From the IMG/VR virus record IMGVR_UViG_3300028558_000016, positions 186,001 through 250,000 of that record: DNA of 64,000 nucleotides. One strand, given 5' to 3'. The first letter of the stretch is position 1. Each line of letters starts with the position of its first letter. The notes beneath the pieces are model-generated. The model ran no database searches. It was not told where the DNA came from and was given only the letters and a program-made list of their open reading frames with translations. Positions 2,578 to 62,319 of this stretch are shown here, one piece after another. Made by a program: the position numbers and the translations under genes.

Positions 2578-2586
2578 AATATATAG
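2578..2586 (+). promoter_or_regulatory. Putative late promoter element AATATATAG
   Basis: One copy of a recurring (A/G)ATATATA(G/C/A) motif found just upstream of starts; resembles the T4 late promoter TATAAATA. Confidence 0.5.
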
Positions 2587-7119: not shown

Positions 7120-7128
7120 AATATATAG
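7120..7128 (+). promoter_or_regulatory. Putative late promoter AATATATAG
   Basis: Recurring motif, 3 nt before ATG 7132. Confidence 0.5.
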
Positions 7129-20084: not shown

Positions 20085-20093
20085 GATATATAG
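20085..20093 (+). promoter_or_regulatory. Putative late promoter GATATATAG
   Basis: Recurring motif, 3 nt before ATG 20097. Confidence 0.5.
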
Positions 20094-48277: not shown

Positions 48278-48320
48278 CATATTAAACGTAATACAAATGG
48301 CAGGCAACTAATTAAAACAA

Positions 48321-49097
48321 ATGGCAAAAATAAGAAAGCTTATTCTTGAGAGGAACAAAAAAATAAAACGCAAATACCTCAAGGAAACAACTGCAGGAAA
48401 AGACTCGGATGCCGTGATGGACGAACTTGCTAAACAGCATGACATTGGAAGATTTTATATTCGTACTATTCTGAAAGAAGAAGGAATAGAGATTGAAAGA
48501 AAAACAGAGTACGAAAGAAGCGACAAGGAAAAGCTTAACAAGAGAGACCAGGACATTATTGATTTGTTCAACACGGAAGTCGACCCTGACGATATTGCAA
48601 AAAAATTCAAACTAACTCCAACGAGAGTAAGGCAGATTCTTCGTGCCAAACTTGGAAAAGCATTCAAGGTACCAAAGCTAAAACTCAAGCTTGAGGAAAT
48701 AAAAAAAGAACTTGAGCAGGGAGTTCCATACGACACTATAGTCGATAAATATGGAAAGAATGTAATCAAGCAAATAAAATACAATCTCAGTTATAACATA
48801 TTCAAGAAATCTCTCGAATACAAAATAAAAGACATTGTGTCAATGGCTAAAAGCGGTGAGGCTCCAAAAAAGATTGCAGACAAACATCGTGTGACGTTGA
48901 ATTATACTTACATGATACTTCACGACAATGGAATACGTTCTAAGATCTCAAAAGACGATAAAGAAAAGAGAGACTTGAAAATATTCAATGCAAGCAAAAA
49001 GAAAAGCGTGGACGTCATAGCAGAAGAATTTGAATTGACTCCTACAATGGTGCGAATAATAATTTCTAAAATGAAACTAACTAAAACCCCTAAATAA
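48321..49097 (+). CDS. Tandem helix-turn-helix DNA-binding protein
   Basis: Repeated IA-x3-(F/H)-x-LT-x3-V-x2-I units. Confidence 0.7.
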   Translation: MAKIRKLILERNKKIKRKYLKETTAGKDSDAVMDELAKQHDIGRFYIRTILKEEGIEIERKTEYERSDKEKLNKRDQDIIDLFNTEVDPDDIAKKFKLTPTRVRQILRAKLGKAFKVPKLKLKLEEIKKELEQGVPYDTIVDKYGKNVIKQIKYNLSYNIFKKSLEYKIKDIVSMAKSGEAPKKIADKHRVTLNYTYMILHDNGIRSKISKDDKEKRDLKIFNASKKKSVDVIAEEFELTPTMVRIIISKMKLTKTPK

Positions 49098-49973: not shown

Positions 49974-50423
49974 ATGAAAGAAGTAAAAATCTTTAAATTA
50001 CGAAGCGTAAAAACCCCTCAAAGGGGAACACCTAAATCGGCGGGAATAGATTTCTTTATCCCGGACGATTTTCCAAGAACAGAACTGTTGCCTCATCAAT
50101 CGGTATTAATACCGTCAGGCATCAAAGTAAAATTACCAGAAGGTTATGCACTTGTTGCAAACAACAAATCTGGAATTGCATCAAAAAAACAATTGATCAT
50201 TGGCGCTTCCGTCGTCGATGAAGATTATCAAGGAGAAATTCATCTCAACCTCATCAACACAGGACACGTGAATGCAATCATCGCACCAGGCGATAAAATC
50301 ATTCAATTCCTTCTTGAAAAACAAGAATATGCTTCTGTTATTGAAGTTGGTTCTGAGGATGAATTATTTAATGGCGTCGTAACAGAAAGAGGCGCAGGCG
50401 GATTTGGTTCTACTGGAGTTTAA
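49974..50423 (+). CDS. dut: Trimeric dUTPase
   Basis: SAGIDF, KSG, VVDEDYQGEI, ERGAGGFGSTG. Confidence 0.95.
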   Translation: MKEVKIFKLRSVKTPQRGTPKSAGIDFFIPDDFPRTELLPHQSVLIPSGIKVKLPEGYALVANNKSGIASKKQLIIGASVVDEDYQGEIHLNLINTGHVNAIIAPGDKIIQFLLEKQEYASVIEVGSEDELFNGVVTERGAGGFGSTGV

Positions 50424-50440
50424 CTAAAAAAATTAATCAC

Positions 50441-51085
50441 ATGGGAAATGACGTTTGGGGAGGAAAACCCGGCATGGAAGCCGAGGATAAAAAATCTGTA
50501 ACTACGCCAATAGTAAGCGCAGGAAGCAGTGATAGAGTAGATTCACTTGGATCTAAAATTTTCTTTTATTCTTCGGTTGTCGAAGATAAAATTCTTGATC
50601 TCAATAAACACTTGCATGAAATATCTGGAAAGATGGCTGCAAGAAATTTTGAAAATTCTTTAGGCGACAATGCTTTAATTACAACACCCATAATGTTGCA
50701 CATTAAATCTTATGGTGGTTCAGTGTTCGCAGGACTTGCTGCAATGGATACAATCATTGATATTAAAAAGAGAGTTCCAGTTTACACAATTGTAGAAGGA
50801 TGTGCAGCAAGCGCAGGAACTTTTCTTTCTTGTGTTGGTACAAAAAGATACATGCGCAAACATGCATGGCTGTTAATTCACCAATTGAGTTCTGGCTTCT
50901 GGGGAAAATACAGCGAGATAAAGGATGAAGTAGAAAATCTCGATCGTTTAATGGAAACAATCAAGAAGATTTACAAGGAGAATACAAAGGTTCCTATGAA
51001 GGAACTTGATGGCATTCTTAAAAGAGACATTTGGTGGGATGCGCAGACTTGTTTGAAGTATGGATTAATAGATGAAATAATTTAA
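50441..51085 (+). CDS. clpP: ClpP-like serine protease
   Basis: SYGGSV, AASAGT, LIHQLS, RDIWWDAQTCLKYGLIDEI. Confidence 0.85.
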   Translation: MGNDVWGGKPGMEAEDKKSVTTPIVSAGSSDRVDSLGSKIFFYSSVVEDKILDLNKHLHEISGKMAARNFENSLGDNALITTPIMLHIKSYGGSVFAGLAAMDTIIDIKKRVPVYTIVEGCAASAGTFLSCVGTKRYMRKHAWLLIHQLSSGFWGKYSEIKDEVENLDRLMETIKKIYKENTKVPMKELDGILKRDIWWDAQTCLKYGLIDEII

Positions 51086-51086
51086 T

Positions 51087-51389
51087 ATGGAAGAAAAAGA
51101 ATTGATAATACTCACACATTATGTGAATGTTGGGAGTTCATCTCCAGAAACAGCAAAGCGTATAATGGAAAGAACCGTAGAAATGGTTTTGAGCGAGGAT
51201 ACAGATCCATTGTATAGATTTAAACATTTTTTCTATCCTGTGAAAGATGAAGTCAATGCAAGAACAGAATGCATCTATCCTGTAAGACAAGGTCCAATGG
51301 GAATTCCTGGAGTTCCTGGAGATTATTTTGAATCGATTTTGAAAGACCTTGATAATAAGTACGAACAGCTTTTAGAAAAAATAGGATGA
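51087..51389 (+). CDS. Hypothetical protein
   Basis: ORF. Confidence 0.6.
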   Translation: MEEKELIILTHYVNVGSSSPETAKRIMERTVEMVLSEDTDPLYRFKHFFYPVKDEVNARTECIYPVRQGPMGIPGVPGDYFESILKDLDNKYEQLLEKIG

Positions 51390-52849
51390 TACTCGATATA
51401 GAAAAAAGACCTCACGAACTTGCATGCAGTTACTTCAATAAAGAAGGAACAATTGAATATGTAAGAATTCCAGTTCCATTGAACGAAAGATTCAATTGGT
51501 TAACTTGTAATGACACGGATAAGGACAAGGACGTAGAATGGAAAACGTGGGACGAAAATCCTGTAAAGAAGATAATCGTAAAAGATGCAACTAAACTTTC
51601 TAAGTATAGATGTGAAGAGGTTATTTATCAACATACACAAGCAAATCCCGACTCTCCGTTATTGGAGTTTAATGTTCCAAGAAAGTATTTCATAGATATT
51701 GAGGTTGAGGTTCTTGATGGATTTCCAGATCCTGACACAGCACAAAATAAAATAACTGCAATATCAATCGCAGGCGCTGATAGCAAAAGGATTTTTGTTC
51801 TTGGTCTTAAACCATTAACAGAAGCGCAATGTCACAAGATCGATGCCGACATCAACGGGCACTTTGCCAAGTTCGATGATAAATGGAATTTCCAATACAA
51901 GCAGTTTGATTCTGAGCATGACATGTTGGTTGAATTCTTTCAGAAGATATTACCTAACATGCCTTGCATAAGTGGATGGAATTTTTTCGGATACGATTGG
52001 AAGTACCTTCTTAACAGAGCTTACAAATACAAGGATGTAAAACCAGAGAGATGTTCTCCGTCGAATACTTTAATAACAAAAAGAAATTCCGGTAATTCAG
52101 GAATTCCACAACATAAGCTTATTGTGGATTACATGGAAATTTACAAGAAGTGGGATAAGGTTATCAAGGTAAGAGAAAACGATAAGCTTGATTATGTTGC
52201 CAAGATGGCAACAGGATTGGAGAAAATTAAATATCCAGGAAGCTTCACAGAGCTTTATGAAAGAGATTTTCAAAAGTTTATCTTCTATAACGCGGTCGAT
52301 TCAATTCTGGTTCATTACATCGATAAGAAGCTAAACACAATGTTGGCTTATCTTAAATTGGCACATGTTTCAGGAATAGAAATAAAGAAAGCATTCTCTC
52401 CTATTTGGATCATGGAAGCAATGATGAACAGAAAATTCCTTGACAGAAAACAAGTATTCGTTTATTTGGGTGGAGATGAAGAAGATCAAAAACCATTTGA
52501 TGGTGCGTATGTAAAAGAACCTTTGAGAGGATTTCACAATTGGGTTACATGTTATGACTTTGCATCTTTGTATCCTAATACCATGATGCAATTCAACATC
52601 AGTCCAGAAACATTTGTTGGAAATAACGTTGAGCCTAAAGAAGGTCAGATCAAGGCCGGTGAGCACGTCAATGAATTTGGAAAAACATCTTGGAGAGTTT
52701 TCGATAACAGCTCTGACTCCATAATGAGAGTAATTTTAACAGAGCTTTATGGAAAGAGAAAAGAAACGAAACAAAAGTACCTCTCTATTAATAAAGAGAT
52801 CGACGCTCTCAGCAAGTACATTTCAAAAGAACGATTAGAGAAAGCCTAA
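51386..52849 (+). CDS. Family B DNA polymerase, N-terminal half (gp43A-like: exonuclease + region II)
   Basis: FIDIE, GWNFFGYDW, YNAVDS, YDFASLYP, NISPET; ends after the first fingers helix, with no KxxxNSxYG or YxDTDS. Confidence 0.9.
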   Translation: MILDIEKRPHELACSYFNKEGTIEYVRIPVPLNERFNWLTCNDTDKDKDVEWKTWDENPVKKIIVKDATKLSKYRCEEVIYQHTQANPDSPLLEFNVPRKYFIDIEVEVLDGFPDPDTAQNKITAISIAGADSKRIFVLGLKPLTEAQCHKIDADINGHFAKFDDKWNFQYKQFDSEHDMLVEFFQKILPNMPCISGWNFFGYDWKYLLNRAYKYKDVKPERCSPSNTLITKRNSGNSGIPQHKLIVDYMEIYKKWDKVIKVRENDKLDYVAKMATGLEKIKYPGSFTELYERDFQKFIFYNAVDSILVHYIDKKLNTMLAYLKLAHVSGIEIKKAFSPIWIMEAMMNRKFLDRKQVFVYLGGDEEDQKPFDGAYVKEPLRGFHNWVTCYDFASLYPNTMMQFNISPETFVGNNVEPKEGQIKAGEHVNEFGKTSWRVFDNSSDSIMRVILTELYGKRKETKQKYLSINKEIDALSKYISKERLEKA

Positions 52850-53236: not shown

Positions 53237-53261
53237 TTTGAATCGAATCGATTATTCCACG

Positions 53262-53296
53262 AAAACCTCCGGAAATTTATTTTTCGGAGGTTTTTT
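53262..53296 (+). terminator. Rho-independent terminator
   Basis: aaaacctccg/cggaggtttt stem followed by a U-tract. Confidence 0.75.
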
Positions 53297-53309
53297 ATTT
53301 TACTTTTTA

Positions 53310-53318
53310 AATATATAG
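53310..53318 (+). promoter_or_regulatory. Putative late promoter AATATATAG
   Basis: Recurring motif upstream of the holin-PAS gene. Confidence 0.5.
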
Positions 53319-53358: not shown

Positions 53359-54207
53359 TTGCTTGTGAAAAATTTTTTAAACGGATTGTTAGATAAAGTT
53401 GTTACTAATTTCGGATTTGACTCAAACCATGATTTCTCCTCTTCCATGATGCATGCTAATTTGCTGTTCTTCACTATACCAGTTGCCTTCATATCTTCCT
53501 TTATAGAAAACTATTTTGGACTGCAGGCTGTTACCCTTATAGCTTTCGTGACGCTTATTGCACTGGAATTAATAACAGGAATAAGTTCTTCAAGAGTAAG
53601 GAAAATTCCATTACAATCAAAGAGGTTCAGCAGATTTGGTTTTAAGCTTGTTATTTGGTTCTTGATATTCTTCATCCTTCAAACCATGAAGCTTCAATAC
53701 AAGGACAATGCCGTCATAGGTGGAATATACAGTTGGCTGCACAGCAGCATCTTCATATATGTCACGCTTGAGTATTTGATCTCTGTTGTTGAGAACGTAT
53801 CTGTCATCACGGGAGATAACAACAACGTCATCCTGCACATGATAAAGGGAACTGTTGGAAAATACATGAAGGTTAAAGAGAATGAGGCGGAAGAGTTCTT
53901 CCAAGTAAACGATGAACTTTTATGTGTTCTGTCTGAAGAAGGTAAATTCAGAAAGGTAAATAAGGCATGGATGGAAGCACTTGGATACGATGAGAAATAC
54001 ATCCTCAATAAAAGCTTTAAGGAATTCGTTCATCCAGAGGATTTAAAGAAGACCAAGGAAGAATATGAGAAATTGAAATCATCTGGAACTATTTCAGGAT
54101 TGATAAACAGGTATAAGACAAAAGACGGCAATTACATCTATTTGTCATGGCACGCTAAAGGAGGTAAGAACGGAATGTTCTACTGCACCACAAAGGTCGT
54201 AATCTAA
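53359..54207 (+). CDS. Phage holin family 4-like membrane domain fused to a PAS domain
   Basis: LELITGI...RFGFKLVIW...LEYLISVVENV; then LCVLSEEGKFRKVNKAWMEALGY...FVHPED...RYKTKDGNYIYLSW. Confidence 0.75.
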   Translation: MLVKNFLNGLLDKVVTNFGFDSNHDFSSSMMHANLLFFTIPVAFISSFIENYFGLQAVTLIAFVTLIALELITGISSSRVRKIPLQSKRFSRFGFKLVIWFLIFFILQTMKLQYKDNAVIGGIYSWLHSSIFIYVTLEYLISVVENVSVITGDNNNVILHMIKGTVGKYMKVKENEAEEFFQVNDELLCVLSEEGKFRKVNKAWMEALGYDEKYILNKSFKEFVHPEDLKKTKEEYEKLKSSGTISGLINRYKTKDGNYIYLSWHAKGGKNGMFYCTTKVVI

Positions 54208-54223
54208 TTAACAAAATCATAAT

Positions 54224-54254
54224 AAGAGCCCTCGAAATTTCGAGGGCTTTTTTA
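54224..54254 (+). terminator. Rho-independent terminator
   Basis: agccctcga-aatt-tcgagggct followed by tttttt. Confidence 0.8.
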
Positions 54255-54278
54255 TTTTTATTATATTGCAATAAGCAA

Positions 54279-54698
54279 ATGATAAAAGATAAAAGTCCAT
54301 ACAACCTTCTACAAGAAATATATTGGCCTGATGAATGGAAGATACTTATCTGTTGCATGTTTTTGAATCAAACCGGAAGGAAACAAGTAGACGCAGTTAG
54401 GGTTTCATTCTTTAAGAAATGGCCAAACGCAAAGAAGGCAGCAAAAGCAGATCCTGGAGAAATGAAAGAGATGATAAGGTCTCTTGGATTTGTCAACAGA
54501 AGAACTATTTCCATCATTAAAATGAGCCAGGATTTCATCGAGAAGGATTGGAAGGAACCAAAGGAACTTTATGGAATTGGACAATACGGACAGGACTCTT
54601 ATGACATATTCGTGAGAGGAAACATAAGGATAAAAAATCCATCTGATCATGTATTGAAAATGTATTTAAAATGGGCTAAACAATATAAAACAAAATAA
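54279..54698 (+). CDS. MBD4-like HhH-GPD DNA glycosylase
   Basis: WKILICCMFLNQT; LYGIGQYGQDSY; PSDH with the catalytic Asp. Confidence 0.85.
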   Translation: MIKDKSPYNLLQEIYWPDEWKILICCMFLNQTGRKQVDAVRVSFFKKWPNAKKAAKADPGEMKEMIRSLGFVNRRTISIIKMSQDFIEKDWKEPKELYGIGQYGQDSYDIFVRGNIRIKNPSDHVLKMYLKWAKQYKTK

Positions 54699-55150: not shown

Positions 55151-55858
55151 ATGGGATTATTCTTTAAGGATGACGATGAAAAAAAGGAAGTAACGAAAAA
55201 GGATGAAAAAAAACCTATCGTTAACAACACGGCAAAAAAAATTCCTTTGTCGATTATGTCGATTAACAACAAAAACAACACTACGGACGACTCGGATTTT
55301 TCCAGCCAGTTCAACGGCACATCTTCCGTCGCAGGTGTGAAAAAACAGGAAATAGTTGAATACTTCGAAAAGATTTTTGAAGAGAACAATATTCCTGGAC
55401 CTGATTACTTTGAATTCAGGAAAGCTTTATTGAAGATGAAAAATGTTGCTCAGGATGATGCAACTAAAATCAAAACAGTTTTCATCGGATTTGAAGCGAT
55501 GGGATTAACTCCACAAAAACTTATAGAGACCACCGGTGTTTACAAAAAATTGTTTGCTGGAAAATTAACCCAATTCAATGGCGAACTTGAAAATGCGTTT
55601 AAAGAACAGATCGGAAAAAAACAAACACAGGTAGATGAGCTTTCAAAAGCCAACATCAAGATCGATGAAGAGATGCGTAAGCTTAATGAGCAAAAAATTG
55701 CAAATCAAAAAACTGCCGAAAATCTAAACGCGGAAATTCAGAAGAACACTTCTGAGTTAAGCACATCAAAAAATGATTTCCATGCAACATACGATGACCT
55801 AATCAAGGAAATTGATGGTCACGTTGATTTGTTCACTAAACACCTTTTAAATCAATAA
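55151..55858 (+). CDS. Soluble coiled-coil protein (gene 1 of the membrane module)
   Basis: PGPDYFEFRKAL then a long coiled coil. Confidence 0.75.
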   Translation: MGLFFKDDDEKKEVTKKDEKKPIVNNTAKKIPLSIMSINNKNNTTDDSDFSSQFNGTSSVAGVKKQEIVEYFEKIFEENNIPGPDYFEFRKALLKMKNVAQDDATKIKTVFIGFEAMGLTPQKLIETTGVYKKLFAGKLTQFNGELENAFKEQIGKKQTQVDELSKANIKIDEEMRKLNEQKIANQKTAENLNAEIQKNTSELSTSKNDFHATYDDLIKEIDGHVDLFTKHLLNQ

Positions 55859-55895
55859 TCACAAATATAAATCATCAACAAAAACCAAATCAAAT

Positions 55896-56921
55896 ATGCA
55901 AACAATTGGATCAGGGGAACCAAAACCCCATTGGATGGAAAAAATAATCCGCTTGGCAATACCAGCAGGATTAATATGGGGAGGTATAAAGCTGTTCAAT
56001 GCTTTTGCTCCCACGTTAATTGAATTCTTCAACAACTTCTGGCACATCGTGCTTGTTGGAGCTCCGGCAGTGTTTCTTACATTGTTCGTTTTACAAAATC
56101 CAACATTCTTATGGATGGGTTATAAAACGCTTTGTCGTAAGATAACTTCCTTCTTTATTAAAATGGATCCGCTGTCATTCATGGACAGATATGTGGATCT
56201 TTTGAAAATGAAAAGAAAAGGCTTGCAAGCAAGCAAAACAAGTCTCAATGCAAATAAGATTCAGCTCGAACGCGATATGGCAGATCTTAAAAAGAACATT
56301 GATGAAAAAATGCGTATGTCCAAGGCCGCAAAAAATTTGGGCGACACCGAAGAAGCAAGTCATCAAGCAGGTATTGCGATGACGGACAAAGGCTCATACG
56401 ATTTGTATGCACCAATTCTCCACAAAATGGAAAGCAATCTTGTATTCCTTACTAAGCTGGATGAAAACTGGGGTCGTTCAATAGAAAAGCTTTCTCACAC
56501 CGTTGAAGCTAAACGTAAAGAATTTACCACGTTGAAAAAAATGGCTAAGGCTCTTAACTTCGCAGAAGAGTTTGCCAAAGGAGATACAGAAGCAAATCGC
56601 ATCTACAAAGAATCTGTGTTAGCATTGGAAGAAAAAGTAACACAAAGTCTTGCATACATTGAACAATTTGAAACAGACTCAAAAGGAGTTATGAAATCAA
56701 TTGATCTTGAAAAACAAATGCAAAACGATGAAGGATTAGAAATGCTTGCTCAATACGAACAAAACGGTTCATTGTTCTTGGATGAAGATTATAGCAAGTA
56801 CAGAATGGAAATTGACCCTAACAAGGATTTATTTTCCAAAGCAAATGCAAATGCAAAAAATAATTTTGCCGATGCAAGCAAAAACAAAAGCACTGAATTC
56901 AGTAGCTTCTTAAAAAAGTAA
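55896..56921 (+). CDS. Two-TM + long coiled-coil protein, PspA/IM30-like architecture (gene 2)
   Basis: N-terminal hydrophobic pair then about 250 aa of helical sequence. Confidence 0.65.
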   Translation: MQTIGSGEPKPHWMEKIIRLAIPAGLIWGGIKLFNAFAPTLIEFFNNFWHIVLVGAPAVFLTLFVLQNPTFLWMGYKTLCRKITSFFIKMDPLSFMDRYVDLLKMKRKGLQASKTSLNANKIQLERDMADLKKNIDEKMRMSKAAKNLGDTEEASHQAGIAMTDKGSYDLYAPILHKMESNLVFLTKLDENWGRSIEKLSHTVEAKRKEFTTLKKMAKALNFAEEFAKGDTEANRIYKESVLALEEKVTQSLAYIEQFETDSKGVMKSIDLEKQMQNDEGLEMLAQYEQNGSLFLDEDYSKYRMEIDPNKDLFSKANANAKNNFADASKNKSTEFSSFLKK

Positions 56922-56983
56922 CAAATCAAAAATAAATAAAAACAAAAACAAGTAGTAATCATCAACAATTAAAAAAACAAATC

Positions 56984-58819
56984 ATGAAAGACAAAATCAC
57001 GTACTTTTTAAAAGAATCAACAGTCTTCACTAAATTCTTAGTGGTAGTAGGCTTAGTTGGAATCGTTTGGGGCTTTAAATATGCATGGGAAACATGGATG
57101 CCTAAACCAACAGTTAAAACGGAAGTAATCGCAGTAAACGATCTTCCACCGTTAGCGTACGATAAAAACGCAAACGCAATTTCGCGTCCTTTACCTGACA
57201 CCATTAACCTTAGCGAGGTTGGTGCACCGTTCCAATTGAGAGCGGAAATCATGGGATGGAACGCGCAAGCCGGAGTAGCATACGCAAATGGTGGAGCACA
57301 AACAATGGCAAAATCAATCATGGAAGAACAAGGTGTTCGTCTTAACTTGATCTGTCAAAACAATTGCGGTAAACAAGGTGAGGATGTATTTGCATTCGCA
57401 CAAGAATATGCTAAAGGAAGTAAAACATCCGCAAAAGGATGTCACATGATTGCCTGGATGGGTGATGGAGTTCCATCTTACTTGCAGGACTTAAACGAAC
57501 GCATCAAAAAACAAATTGGTGAAGAATACATCTTACAAGTGTTCGCAACGTTCGGTGCTTCTTTCGGTGAAGATAAAGCAATCTTCGAAAACGGTTCATT
57601 CAAACAAGATCCTCAAAAATTACGCGGTTCATTATGGTGCGGTGTTATTCGTGATGGAGATTGGAACATCTTAATGAAATATGCAGACATGAACCAAATT
57701 CCAGTAAACACAGATCTTACAACTTACGATCCTACCGGTATTAATTGGATGCAAGCTCCTGATTTCGATTACACGAAAGCTGCTCAACAATATGTTGCTC
57801 GCACAAAAGAAAAACGTGAAATCGTTATAAATGGAAAACGTACAGGCCGTGACACTACAGTTGCAGTTAATGGTTGTGTTACATGGTTCCCTGGTGATCA
57901 AGTTGCTTTCCAAGGTCGTGGCGGTGTAACAGTTGCTTCAACTAAAGATTTTGGTGCTCAAATGGCAAACACTTGGTTAGCTCCAAAGAAATGGTTACAA
58001 GACAATCGCGCATACGTTGAGAAATTTATTTATGCCGGTTTATTAGGTGGAGATCAAGTTAAATCTCATAGTTCAGCTCTTGCATTTGGTTGCCGTGTTG
58101 AAACTGCTATCTATGCTGATGCTACAATGAAAGCTTCTGATTGGGAAAATGCATTCAAAGGAATGCAATATACCGATGCAAATGGAAACATGTGCGAAAT
58201 CGGTGGTTCACGTGTATTCAACTTATCGGATGCTGCTGAGTATTATGGATTAACAAATGGTGGAACTGACAAATATGCTGCGGTGTATTCTACATTCGGT
58301 GATCTTTGTGTTAAGGCATATCCTAAAGACGTTCCAAAATATCCTGCTTATGAAGAAGTAGTTGATTTAAGCTACATCACAGAAGTTTACACCAAGAACA
58401 AAGGGTCAAACACTTCAGTTGCTTCAATGCCAACATTCAAAGAAGGTCAAACAATGACATCATCGTTTTCTTCTAAGAAAGTTTCCATTGAATTTGACTT
58501 AGGTAGCGCAACAATCAAGCCTTCATCTTATGCTACATTACAAGGCATTGCAAACGATTTCATCGTTGCTGAAGGTTTACTTGCAACTATCGAAGGTCAT
58601 ACTGACAACACTGGAAATGCTGATGCTAACATGAACCTATCTCAACAACGTGCTGATGCCGTTAAGAATTGGTTGATGAATAAAAATCCTAAGTTATTCA
58701 AAAACAAAATCACTTCGGTTGGTTACGGACAAGATCGTCCAGTTGATCCAAACGCAGACAACAACAATGCTTCTAATAGAGCACACAATCGTCGCGTTGA
58801 AATTAAACTTGGCCACTAA
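56984..58819 (+). CDS. ABC-type substrate-binding domain fused to an OmpA C-terminal peptidoglycan-binding domain (gene 3)
   Basis: N-terminal TM; IEGHTDNTG, LSQQRADAV, GYGQDRP, NRRVEI. Confidence 0.85.
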   Translation: MKDKITYFLKESTVFTKFLVVVGLVGIVWGFKYAWETWMPKPTVKTEVIAVNDLPPLAYDKNANAISRPLPDTINLSEVGAPFQLRAEIMGWNAQAGVAYANGGAQTMAKSIMEEQGVRLNLICQNNCGKQGEDVFAFAQEYAKGSKTSAKGCHMIAWMGDGVPSYLQDLNERIKKQIGEEYILQVFATFGASFGEDKAIFENGSFKQDPQKLRGSLWCGVIRDGDWNILMKYADMNQIPVNTDLTTYDPTGINWMQAPDFDYTKAAQQYVARTKEKREIVINGKRTGRDTTVAVNGCVTWFPGDQVAFQGRGGVTVASTKDFGAQMANTWLAPKKWLQDNRAYVEKFIYAGLLGGDQVKSHSSALAFGCRVETAIYADATMKASDWENAFKGMQYTDANGNMCEIGGSRVFNLSDAAEYYGLTNGGTDKYAAVYSTFGDLCVKAYPKDVPKYPAYEEVVDLSYITEVYTKNKGSNTSVASMPTFKEGQTMTSSFSSKKVSIEFDLGSATIKPSSYATLQGIANDFIVAEGLLATIEGHTDNTGNADANMNLSQQRADAVKNWLMNKNPKLFKNKITSVGYGQDRPVDPNADNNNASNRAHNRRVEIKLGH

Positions 58820-62138: not shown

Positions 62139-62319
62139 TCCATTTGGAAGATTTCCGCCTGGAAATTTAACTTATTGATTATCAACAAGTTACGCATTAT
62201 TCCACCAATTTTGATGAAATTATTTTTCTATATGGAACATATTTAGTAATTTTACATTGTTAAAGGAAAACAAATAACCTTAAAAATAAACAAAGTAAAA
62301 ATTAAAAAACAAAAAAGCC

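What the first reader, a model, noticed from the sequence alone, without database searches (positions are those of the whole stretch)
53359..54207. Holin-PAS fusion: a possible sensor-gated lysis timer
Seen: a multi-TM N-terminal domain with the holin family 4 signature (ELITGI...KL...EYLISVVEN) joined in frame to a complete PAS domain (VNKAW...LGY...FVHPED...RYKTKDG...W). It has no kinase or other output domain and is its own transcription unit, with a late motif and terminators on both sides. Established: holins set lysis time, and PAS domains sense small ligands, redox or light and drive dimerisation. Inference: lysis timing is coupled directly to a cytoplasmic cue, a lysis-control route distinct from T4 antiholin-based lysis inhibition.
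Basis: partly seen in the sequence, partly recalled or inferred. Interest (0 to 1): 0.82.

Follow-up and report, generated by a model that had tools for sequence, protein, structure and literature searches.

The report
Phage holin fused to PAS domain
A 482-kb soil megaphage carries a separately transcribed gene, with a virion-gene-type promoter motif, for a four-helix membrane "holin" (the protein class that decides when a phage bursts its host) fused to a cytoplasmic PAS domain; the design is conserved, I found no description of it, and it could let the phage regulate its lysis clock from inside the cell.

Summary
Window 53359-54207 (+) is an intact 282-aa ORF. Residues 48-155 pass Pfam's threshold for Phage_holin_4_1, and residues about 181-282 pass the thresholds for PAS_3 and TIGR00229. 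An AlphaFold model shows four long helices followed by a complete PAS fold, and nothing follows the PAS domain.

The gene is bracketed by intrinsic terminators. It is preceded by ATATATAG, a motif found almost only just upstream of genes. The annotatable genes with this motif are virion genes. Four orthologous loci keep the whole layout despite saturated synonymous divergence. dN/dS is 0.04 for the membrane part and 0.08 for PAS.

At least 11 clusters (50% identity) of this holin subfamily carry a PAS or PAS-like tail. PAS-less relatives sit directly beside Amidase_2 endolysin genes. One PAS-fused relative sits about 430 bp from a lysozyme gene.

This genome has no other PF05105 gene and no T4-type holin T. 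A soluble GH19-like endolysin lies 131 kb away.

The lysis-holin reading is therefore well supported but unproven. That PAS senses a cytoplasmic cue is not shown. Its nearest relatives are cofactor-less PAS domains, some of them dimerisation modules. I call it a new variant of a known kind.

The parts
53261..53305 (+). Intrinsic terminator (15-pair hairpin plus T-run) that ends the upstream DUF4494-like gene and isolates the holin-PAS unit
   Evidence: An equivalent hairpin plus T-run sits upstream of the orthologues in L003, L004, L024 and L025.
53309..53318 (+). Promoter-like motif AAATATATAG (core ATATATAG at 53311-53318), 40 nt before the TTG start; virion-gene ('late') class
   Evidence: There are 28 genome copies, and 23 lie within 120 nt upstream of a same-strand gene. 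The annotatable motif genes are a T4 gp15-like sheath stabiliser, a gp21-like prohead protease and a collagen-like tail fibre. The core is strictly conserved upstream of four orthologues although pS is 0.6-1.0.
53359..54207 (+). Holin-PAS coding sequence, 282 aa (280 aa if read from GTG 53365), TAA stop
53359..53814 (+). Membrane domain, aa 1-152: conserved N-terminal helix with an NFGFD motif, then four TM helices (aa 30-53, 55-80, 87-113, 118-151). Pfam Phage_holin_4_1 matches aa 48-155. Predicted N-in/C-in.
   Evidence: The subfamily has 341 clusters at E<=1e-3, mostly stand-alone proteins of 165-195 aa.
53815..53898 (+). Cytoplasmic amphipathic helix (aa 157-170, shared with PAS-less relatives) and a flexible linker ending in the conserved acidic-FF junction (EEFF)
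   Evidence: Model pLDDT is below 50 at aa 166-179. The D/E-FF junction is shared by the divergent fusion clusters P0017, P0023, P0038, P0031 and P0042.
53899..54204 (+). Complete cytoplasmic PAS domain, aa 181-282 (PAS_3 type), which is the C-terminus of the protein
   Evidence: dN/dS is 0.078 against the L025 orthologue.
54224..54261 (+). Intrinsic terminator (12-pair hairpin plus T-run) that ends the unit. The next gene, an HhH-GPD glycosylase, follows with a host-type TAnnTT(T/G)-like box.

Best explanation
The gene most likely encodes the lysis holin of a 482-kb, distantly T4-like megaphage from rhizosphere metagenomes; its promoter motifs suggest a Bacteroidota host.

Proposed course of events:
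1. The gene is transcribed on its own from a virion-gene-class promoter (ATATATAG). This is inferred from motif association and conservation.
2. The protein inserts into the inner membrane with four TM helices, N-in/C-in. This is predicted.
3. It accumulates until it forms lesions that release the phage's signal-less GH19-like endolysin, encoded 131 kb away, and lysis follows. This is inferred from family membership and from lysis-cassette contexts of relatives.
4. The C-terminal PAS domain sits in the cytoplasm, where other holins carry a short charged regulatory tail. It acts as a built-in regulator of triggering by controlling holin self-association through PAS-PAS or PAS-partner contacts. 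This is inferred.

Whether that control also responds to a ligand or redox cue is open. I consider protein-protein control more likely than small-molecule sensing.
For: Domain calls are above curated thresholds, and the predicted structure shows 4 TM helices plus a PAS fold.

It is the only PF05105 hit and the only PAS_3 hit in the genome. There is no T4-type holin T.

The genome encodes an endolysin-like 243-aa ORF with no TM segment or signal sequence (phrog_181, E 7e-24; GH19 motif), which would need a holin.

Relatives lie in lysis contexts. PAS-less P0012 (46% identity) is directly downstream of an Amidase_2 gene. The homologue in a 63-kb, 95%-complete phage (L058/G010) is followed directly, within about 10 bp, by an Amidase_2 gene. 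PAS-fused P0017, in a T4-like phage, lies about 430 bp from a Phage_lysozyme gene.

The promoter motif is shared with the gp15-like, gp21-like and tail-fibre genes. Motif and terminators are conserved in four orthologues.

Purifying selection acts on both halves: dN/dS 0.035 for the TM part and 0.078 for PAS.

The architecture recurs. PAS is called by Pfam in 5 clusters and by a family HMM in 6 more. All C-extended proteins fall in one subtree.

The PAS domain is closest to cofactor-less PAS domains, some of them dimerisation modules.
Against: In this genome the gene is not in a lysis cassette. It sits among replication and repair genes, 131 kb from the GH19-like gene and 207 kb from the SLT gene.

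No PHROG holin family matches it, and it fails the NCBIfam holin_1 cut-off (24.9 against 150).

Only PF05105 and Phage_holin_T were searched genome-wide. Another small holin among roughly 700 genes cannot be excluded.

The 'late' class of the motif rests on three annotatable genes. Twelve of the 23 gene-proximal motif copies end 3-5 nt before an ATG, which is odd for a promoter box.

No expression data were obtained; no RNA run was listed.

PF05105 also contains non-lytic members. TcdE of C. difficile is a toxin-release protein (general knowledge from the Pfam family description).

The model's pTM is 0.40, so the relative placement of the domains is not informative.
Confidence: 0.55

Rival explanations
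1. The PAS domain is a true sensor of a cytoplasmic small molecule, redox state, oxygen or light. Ligand occupancy directly gates holin triggering, so lysis time tracks host physiology.
For: The PAS fold is complete and well predicted, and under strong purifying selection. The PAS_3 signature residues (HPED, NRYKTKDG-Y, W) are retained across the megaphage orthologues. HIF-2alpha PAS-B, among the structural neighbours, has a ligandable internal cavity. Holins are known to respond to membrane energisation, so an energy or redox input would make biological sense (general knowledge).
Against: No cofactor signature is present. There is no LOV cysteine, and the predicted F-alpha helix (aa 226-242) has no histidine at a haem-ligand position, judged by reading the sequence. 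The best solved relatives have no cofactor, and the ARNT/HIF ones act by dimerisation. In several sister clusters the tail has lost the PAS_3 signature yet is retained, which argues for a structural role. No ligand can be inferred with these tools.
Confidence: 0.25
2. It is not the lysis holin. It would be a holin-like membrane protein with another role, for example a membrane-anchored PAS regulator, a TcdE-like export pore for a phage protein, or a depolarising superinfection-exclusion or takeover factor.
For: The genomic neighbourhood is dUTPase, ClpP, PolB and a glycosylase, with no adjacent endolysin or spanin. This synteny is conserved in the orthologues. PF05105 includes non-lytic TcdE (general knowledge). 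There is no PHROG holin hit. The phage also encodes a membrane-anchored SLT enzyme that could be released by depolarisation alone.
Against: It has its own virion-class promoter motif and terminators, which set it apart from its neighbours in timing. Close relatives, including a PAS-fused one, lie beside endolysin genes. No PADLOC defence model matches. The T4-like morphogenesis genes here are consistent with T4, whose lysis genes are scattered (general knowledge). In a 226-kb relative the holin homologue is likewise more than 40 kb from any lysozyme or amidase gene.
Confidence: 0.2
3. It is an antiholin: a holin homologue whose bulky PAS tail blocks hole formation and delays an as-yet unrecognised true holin.
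For: Antiholins are often modified holin homologues, such as lambda S107 (general knowledge). A large cytoplasmic domain could sterically hinder raft formation.
Against: There is no second PF05105-family gene in the genome for it to heterodimerise with. The two candidate starts (TTG 53359 and GTG 53365) differ only by Met-Leu, with no added charge, so there is no lambda-type dual-start motif. The membrane domain is as conserved as in stand-alone holins: E70, E138, E145 and N146 are invariant.
Confidence: 0.08

Closest known systems
Pfam PF05105 Phage_holin_4_1 holins (holin superfamily IV; phage holins of Firmicutes and C. difficile TcdE)
   Same: The membrane domain scores above the Pfam gathering threshold, has several TM helices with conserved intramembrane acidic and polar residues, and has relatives directly beside amidase or lysozyme genes.
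   Different: This is a divergent subfamily with an extra conserved N-terminal helix (NFGFD motif) and four TM helices. It occurs in low-GC metagenomic phages (25-37% GC), including jumbo and mega-sized ones, and carries a roughly 100-aa PAS domain in place of a short charged C-terminal tail. It fails the NCBIfam holin_1 subfamily cut-off and matches no PHROG holin family.
T4 holin T with antiholins RI and RIII (lysis inhibition)
   Same: Both are holins with a sizeable globular domain through which timing is regulated. In both, the lysis genes are scattered in the genome and expressed late. The phage here has T4-like morphogenesis genes (gp15-like, gp21-like).
   Different: There is no homology; Phage_holin_T is absent. 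T has one TM helix and a periplasmic globular domain that binds RI. Here there are four TM helices and the globular domain is cytoplasmic and a PAS fold. No RI/RIII-like partner was identified.
Lambda S105/S107 holin-antiholin and its C-terminal cytoplasmic regulatory tail
   Same: The regulatory element sits at the cytoplasmic C-terminus of a multi-TM holin, and weak start codons may be in use.
   Different: There is no dual-start charge motif. The regulator is a folded 100-aa domain rather than a short charged tail, and the holin family is different.
PAS-regulated membrane proteins (KCNH/hERG channels with a cytoplasmic PAS 'eag' domain; Aer-type membrane PAS sensors)
   Same: By analogy only: a cytoplasmic PAS domain attached to a pore-forming or membrane protein modulates its gating or signalling, in KCNH channels without a known ligand (general knowledge).
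   Different: There is no homology of the membrane parts, the biological setting is unrelated, and the analogy was not tested here.
Cofactor-less PAS domains: Leptospira LIC_11128 diguanylate cyclase PAS (8px4) and ARNT / HIF-2alpha PAS-B
   Same: These are the best sequence and structure matches: phmmer E 1.3e-10 to 8px4, and Foldseek TM-score by target of 0.84-0.90.
   Different: Those PAS domains are attached to enzymatic or DNA-binding outputs. Here the only 'output' is the holin membrane domain.

Membership tests
Pfam PF05105 Phage_holin_4_1 | Profile score above the curated gathering threshold | tested here: met
   29.2 bits against 22.2, aa 48-155, profile positions 2-104 of 116. The genome scan gave 31 bits.
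Pfam PF05105 Phage_holin_4_1 | Small integral membrane protein with 3-4 TM helices | tested here: met
   Four hydropathy peaks and four long helices in the AlphaFold2 model. Stand-alone relatives are 165-195 aa.
Functional holin (any family) | Encoded next to or with an endolysin (lysis cassette) | tested here: not met
   The neighbours are dUTPase, ClpP, PolB and HhH-GPD. The GH19-like endolysin is 131 kb away and the SLT gene 207 kb away. The feature is met in relatives. It is also not obligatory: T4 scatters its lysis genes.
Functional holin (any family) | Late expression | tested here: inconclusive
   The gene shares the ATATATAG upstream motif with three virion genes, and the motif is conserved in orthologues. 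No transcript data exist.
Functional holin (any family) | Forms lethal membrane lesions at a programmed time, is triggered prematurely by energy poisons, and releases endolysin | not testable with these tools
   This needs expression and complementation experiments.
NCBIfam NF035928 holin_1 subfamily | Score above the curated cut-off | tested here: not met
   24.9 bits against a cut-off of 150.
PAS domain (Pfam PAS_3 PF08447 / TIGR00229) | Profile score above the curated thresholds | tested here: met
   PAS_3 scores 44 against 25.6, PAS 29.4 against 22.6, PAS_9 28.7 against 27. TIGR00229 scores 46.8 against 22.9.
PAS domain (Pfam PAS_3 PF08447 / TIGR00229) | Five-stranded antiparallel sheet with flanking helices | tested here: met
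   The model has strands 187-191, 196-200, 244-253, 259-268 and 274-280 plus helices, at pLDDT 80-88. TM-score is 0.88 to 8px4.
Cofactor-binding PAS sensors (LOV/FMN, haem, FAD) | Signature ligand residues, such as the LOV cysteine in NCRFL or the proximal histidine on F-alpha | tested here: not met
   The corresponding stretch reads NKSFKEFVHPED with no cysteine, and there is no histidine in the predicted F-alpha helix at aa 226-242. The nearest solved relatives are cofactor-less. This does not exclude an unknown ligand.
T4-type lysis inhibition (holin T / RI / RIII) | Presence of a Phage_holin_T (PF11031) homologue | tested here: not met
   No match at E<=0.1 in the whole genome.
Lambda-type dual-start holin/antiholin | Two in-frame starts that differ by an added positive charge | tested here: not met
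   TTG at 53359 and GTG at 53365 differ by Met-Leu only, and orthologues start at the MK(N/G)F position.

The most novel reading that the evidence does not exclude
The PAS domain is a genuine intracellular signal receiver on the holin itself. It would bind a host metabolite or redox cofactor, or a phage- or host-encoded partner reporting on infection state, and convert that input directly into earlier or delayed hole formation. That would be a one-protein, cytoplasm-facing counterpart of T4 lysis inhibition. It arose in one holin lineage, probably once, and was kept in soil megaphages and some T4-like phages.
Probability: 0.27. Interest if true: 0.85.

Novelty: new variant of a known kind. Interest (0 to 1): 0.66.

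Why it matters
Holins are the molecular clocks of phage infection. The known ways of resetting that clock use separate antiholins (lambda S107, T4 RI/RIII) or short charged tails. A holin that carries its own folded cytoplasmic signalling or dimerisation domain would be a new regulatory design.

It would make a long-standing question directly testable: can lysis time be coupled to the physiological state of the infected cell, and how? That question matters most for very large phages with long infection cycles in nutrient-poor soil hosts.

The architecture is conserved across many metagenomic lineages, so it is not a curiosity of one genome. A PAS-controlled membrane lesion former would also be a compact, engineerable lysis switch.

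Full-text searches of the held literature found no description of a holin-PAS fusion.

Tried and rejected
- Megablast of the region against the phage collection gave no match. tblastn found one weak hit to the membrane part only (MT836146, 26% identity).
- ORFs of at least 150 aa under the standard code cover 77% of the genome, TAG-sense adds little, and the gene has TAA stops at its end and in frame upstream. Recoding is irrelevant here.
- PHROGs has no holin family hit; only an unknown-function family matches the PAS part.
- Amidase_2, Amidase_3, Phage_lysozyme, Peptidase_M15_4, GH25 and GH108 are absent from the genome. For GH108 the control genomes did not ring either, so that negative is weak.
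- The T4-type holin T is absent.
- PADLOC defence models give no hit for the holin-PAS protein, so a defence-effector reading is not supported.
- phmmer with four single lysin sequences against ORFs of 45 related IMG/VR loci found nothing. Family searches on the records then found the adjacency in G010.
- A first k-mer count of the 80 nt upstream region against the genome was uninformative. Enrichment over all upstream regions revealed the motifs.
- The ESM Atlas feature search returned only generic PAS clusters.
- No RNA sequencing run was listed for the gene.
- The C-terminal extension of P0026 could not be shown to be PAS-like. P0043, P0047 and P0069 carry unrelated, low-complexity or other tails.
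- The tree of the short membrane domain is poorly resolved (41 of 64 branches open). A single origin of the fusion is compatible with it but not demonstrated.

Full report
**1. What is there**

Window 53359-54207 (+) is an intact ORF of 282 aa. It has a TTG start, an alternative GTG two codons later, a TAA stop, and a TAA in frame just upstream.

Pfam places aa 48-155 in Phage_holin_4_1 (PF05105; 29.2 bits, cut-off 22.2). It places aa 199-271 in PAS_3 (44 bits, cut-off 25.6), and PAS and PAS_9 also pass. NCBIfam's sensory_box model TIGR00229 scores 46.8 against 22.9.

Hydropathy shows four peaks. The loop at aa 77-95 carries six Lys/Arg and no acidic residue. By the positive-inside rule this gives N-in/C-in and puts PAS in the cytoplasm.

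An AlphaFold2 model built on 12 sequences has mean pLDDT 73. It shows a short N-terminal helix and four long helices (30-53, 55-80, 87-113, 118-151). An amphipathic helix (157-170) and a disordered linker (166-179) follow. The C-terminus is a complete five-stranded PAS fold at pLDDT 80-88. Foldseek matches the PAS part to solved PAS domains, with TM-score by target 0.88 for 8px4 and 0.84-0.90 for ARNT/HIF PAS-B. It also matches PAS domains of histidine kinases in AlphaFold DB. Nothing follows the PAS domain.

**2. The genome**

The window is bases 186001-250000 of a 482,156-bp viral record that CheckV rates 100% complete. GC content is 36.8%, and there is no sign of stop-codon reassignment that would affect this gene. 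The sequence is held by rhizosphere metagenome runs.

The phage has distantly T4-like morphogenesis genes: a gp15-like sheath stabiliser and a gp21-like prohead protease.

An enriched upstream motif, TTAGTATATTTG, contains the TAnnTTTG box. From general knowledge that box is the -7 element of Bacteroidota promoters, which suggests a Bacteroidota host. That host assignment is inference.

**3. The transcription unit**

Terminator-like hairpins with T-runs flank the gene at 53261-53295 and 54224-54251.

Forty nucleotides upstream of the start lies AAATATATAG. Across the genome ATATATAG occurs 28 times. Twenty-three copies lie within 120 nt upstream of a same-strand gene start. By my arithmetic such positions make up about 8.6% of strand positions, so about 2.4 would be expected.

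Of ten motif-bearing genes scanned against PHROGs, four have a functional annotation, all virion-related. Three are solid: the sheath stabiliser, the prohead protease and a collagen-like tail fibre. The fourth is a weak tape-measure hit.

Two caveats apply:
- Only three genes define the class.
- Twelve of the 23 gene-proximal copies end 3-5 nt before an ATG, which is unusual for a -10-like box and remains unexplained.

The layout is terminator, ATATATAG, 25-46 nt, start, coding sequence, terminator. It is conserved in four orthologous loci (L003, L004, L024, L025), although synonymous sites are at or near saturation (pS 0.6-1.0). In each case the next gene downstream carries a host-type box. 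The holin-PAS gene is thus a separately timed unit embedded in a block of dUTPase, ClpP, PolB N-terminal part and HhH-GPD glycosylase genes. A gene with PHROG "late transcriptional activator" hits and a host-type promoter lies 4 kb upstream, at window 48321-49097.

**4. Relatives and evolution**

A word-indexed search found about ten full-length fusion orthologues (63-87% identity) on independent contigs. It also found PAS-less relatives at 41-46% identity.

A profile of the membrane domain finds 341 clusters (50% identity) at E<=1e-3 among 1.84 billion representatives. Most are stand-alone proteins of 165-195 aa.

Among the longer ones:
- Pfam calls PAS in P0017, P0021, P0023 and P0053, in addition to the window's own cluster.
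- An HMM built only from the PAS parts detects the tails of P0038, P0031, P0030, P0042, P0029 and P0041.
- P0045's tail is homologous to P0041's.
- P0026's tail is unresolved.

The fusions share an acidic-FF junction.

In a maximum-likelihood tree of the membrane domains, all 17 C-extended proteins fall in one 26-row subtree (SH-aLRT 87) and none among the other 41 rows. The tree is poorly resolved and needs at least four changes. This is compatible with one old fusion followed by losses, but does not prove it.

All 45 relatives in IMG/VR are stand-alone.

In the window's lineage both halves are under strong purifying selection. Against L025, dN/dS is 0.035 for the membrane part and 0.078 for PAS.

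**5. Is it a lysis holin?**

Evidence for:
- PAS-less P0012 lies directly after an Amidase_2 gene within a tail-gene region.
- In a 63-kb, 95%-complete phage, the holin homologue is followed directly, within about 10 bp, by an Amidase_2 gene.
- PAS-fused P0017 lies about 430 bp from a 156-aa Phage_lysozyme gene in a T4-like phage with Portal_T4 and gp13.
- In the window's genome it is the only PF05105 gene, and there is no T4-type holin T.
- The genome encodes a 243-aa endolysin-like protein without a TM segment or signal sequence (phrog_181, E 7e-24; GH19-like YVGRGFNQIT motif) at G000:107452-108183. Such an enzyme needs a holin.

Evidence against:
- No endolysin is adjacent in this genome.
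- No PHROG holin family matches.
- Only two holin families were searched genome-wide.
- PF05105 also includes the non-lytic TcdE.

Scattered lysis genes are normal for T4 (general knowledge). They are also seen in a 226-kb relative.

I put the lysis-holin reading at about 0.6-0.65.

**6. What the PAS domain does**

Its position corresponds to the cytoplasmic C-terminal tail that tunes timing in other holins (general knowledge of lambda S). A role in controlling triggering is therefore the natural inference.

Nothing indicates a cofactor:
- The LOV cysteine position reads NKSFKEF.
- The predicted F-alpha helix has no histidine.
- The best sequence and structure relatives are the cofactor-less LIC_11128 PAS, and ARNT/HIF/PER PAS domains that work through protein-protein contacts.
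- Several sister lineages keep a tail that has lost the PAS_3 signature.

My best explanation is a holin whose self-association is governed by PAS-PAS or PAS-partner contacts, that is, a built-in timer or gate. Ligand or redox sensing is a less likely but open refinement (about 0.25-0.3).

Other rivals:
- A non-lytic holin-like membrane protein (0.2).
- An antiholin (below 0.1). This is disfavoured because no second family member exists in the genome and there is no dual-start charge motif.

No defence-system model matches.

**7. Novelty**

Full-text searches found no description of such a fusion. The searches were holin + PAS domain + phage; megaphage + holin; PF05105; and holin + sensor domain + lysis timing.

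Both parts belong to known families, and the concept of regulated holins is established. The architecture, a holin with its own cytoplasmic PAS domain, recurrent and conserved, appears undescribed. I rate it a new variant of a known kind, with interest 0.66. It is directly testable by expression and complementation assays and by PAS biochemistry.

Noticed in passing
window 2579-2586, 7121-7128, 20086-20093 (and 9 more sites in G000): Twelve of the 23 gene-proximal copies of the ATATATAG motif end exactly 3-5 nt before the called ATG (for example ATATATAGACCATG). This is odd for a promoter box. It could mean leaderless transcripts, a dual promoter and translation-start signal, or mis-called starts.
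   Followed up: partly
window 48280-48320 upstream of gene 48321-49097; about 20 further sites in G000: The motif TTAGTATATTTG (containing TAnnTTTG, the Bacteroidota -7 promoter box) precedes about 20 genes. It suggests a Bacteroidota host and an early, host-RNA-polymerase gene class.
   Followed up: partly
window 48321-49097 (+): A 258-aa protein hits PHROG 'late transcriptional activator' families (phrog_836, phrog_532) and is driven by the host-type promoter box. It is a candidate activator of the ATATATAG class.
   Followed up: no
window 51386-52849 (+): The family-B DNA polymerase gene holds only the exonuclease domain and the first third of the polymerase domain (487 aa). The same truncated size (483-493 aa) is conserved in three orthologous loci. 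No Y[GAC]DTDS motif occurs in any frame of the genome. The polymerase may be split or highly divergent.
   Followed up: partly
window 55151-58819 (+): Three consecutive genes: a coiled-coil protein (235 aa), a membrane plus coiled-coil protein (341 aa), and a 611-aa protein with an OmpA/MotB-type peptidoglycan-binding C-terminus (it also hits the ZorB MotB-like part). In a relative they are followed by ABC-transporter genes. This may be an envelope-associated module of unknown role.
   Followed up: no
window 54279-54698 (+): A small HhH-GPD base-excision glycosylase lies directly after the holin-PAS terminator. By my reading of the sequence it is MBD4-like, with an LYGIGQYGQDSY hairpin.
   Followed up: no
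window about 62160-62190; about 10 sites in G000: A roughly 25-bp palindromic intergenic element, TAACTnnTTGATTATCAAnnAGTTA, is repeated about 10 times in the genome. It looks like an operator or an RNA hairpin.
   Followed up: no
G000:446557-447387 (-) (locus L008:1402-2232), outside the window: A 276-aa SLT lytic-transglycosylase protein has an N-terminal membrane anchor and a host-type promoter box. It overlaps a downstream 153-aa ORF with a C-terminal TM segment. It could be a SAR-like second lysin or a cell-wall remodelling enzyme.
   Followed up: partly
G000:107452-108183 (+) (locus L023:1147-1878), outside the window: A soluble GH19-like endolysin candidate (phrog_181, E 7e-24) lies between a glycosyltransferase-25-like gene and a guanylate-kinase-like gene (both named from my reading of the translations), with no holin next to it.
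   Followed up: yes
window 49974-51085 (+): dUTPase and ClpP-family protease genes lie side by side upstream of PolB, and this arrangement is conserved in the related megaphage contigs.
   Followed up: no
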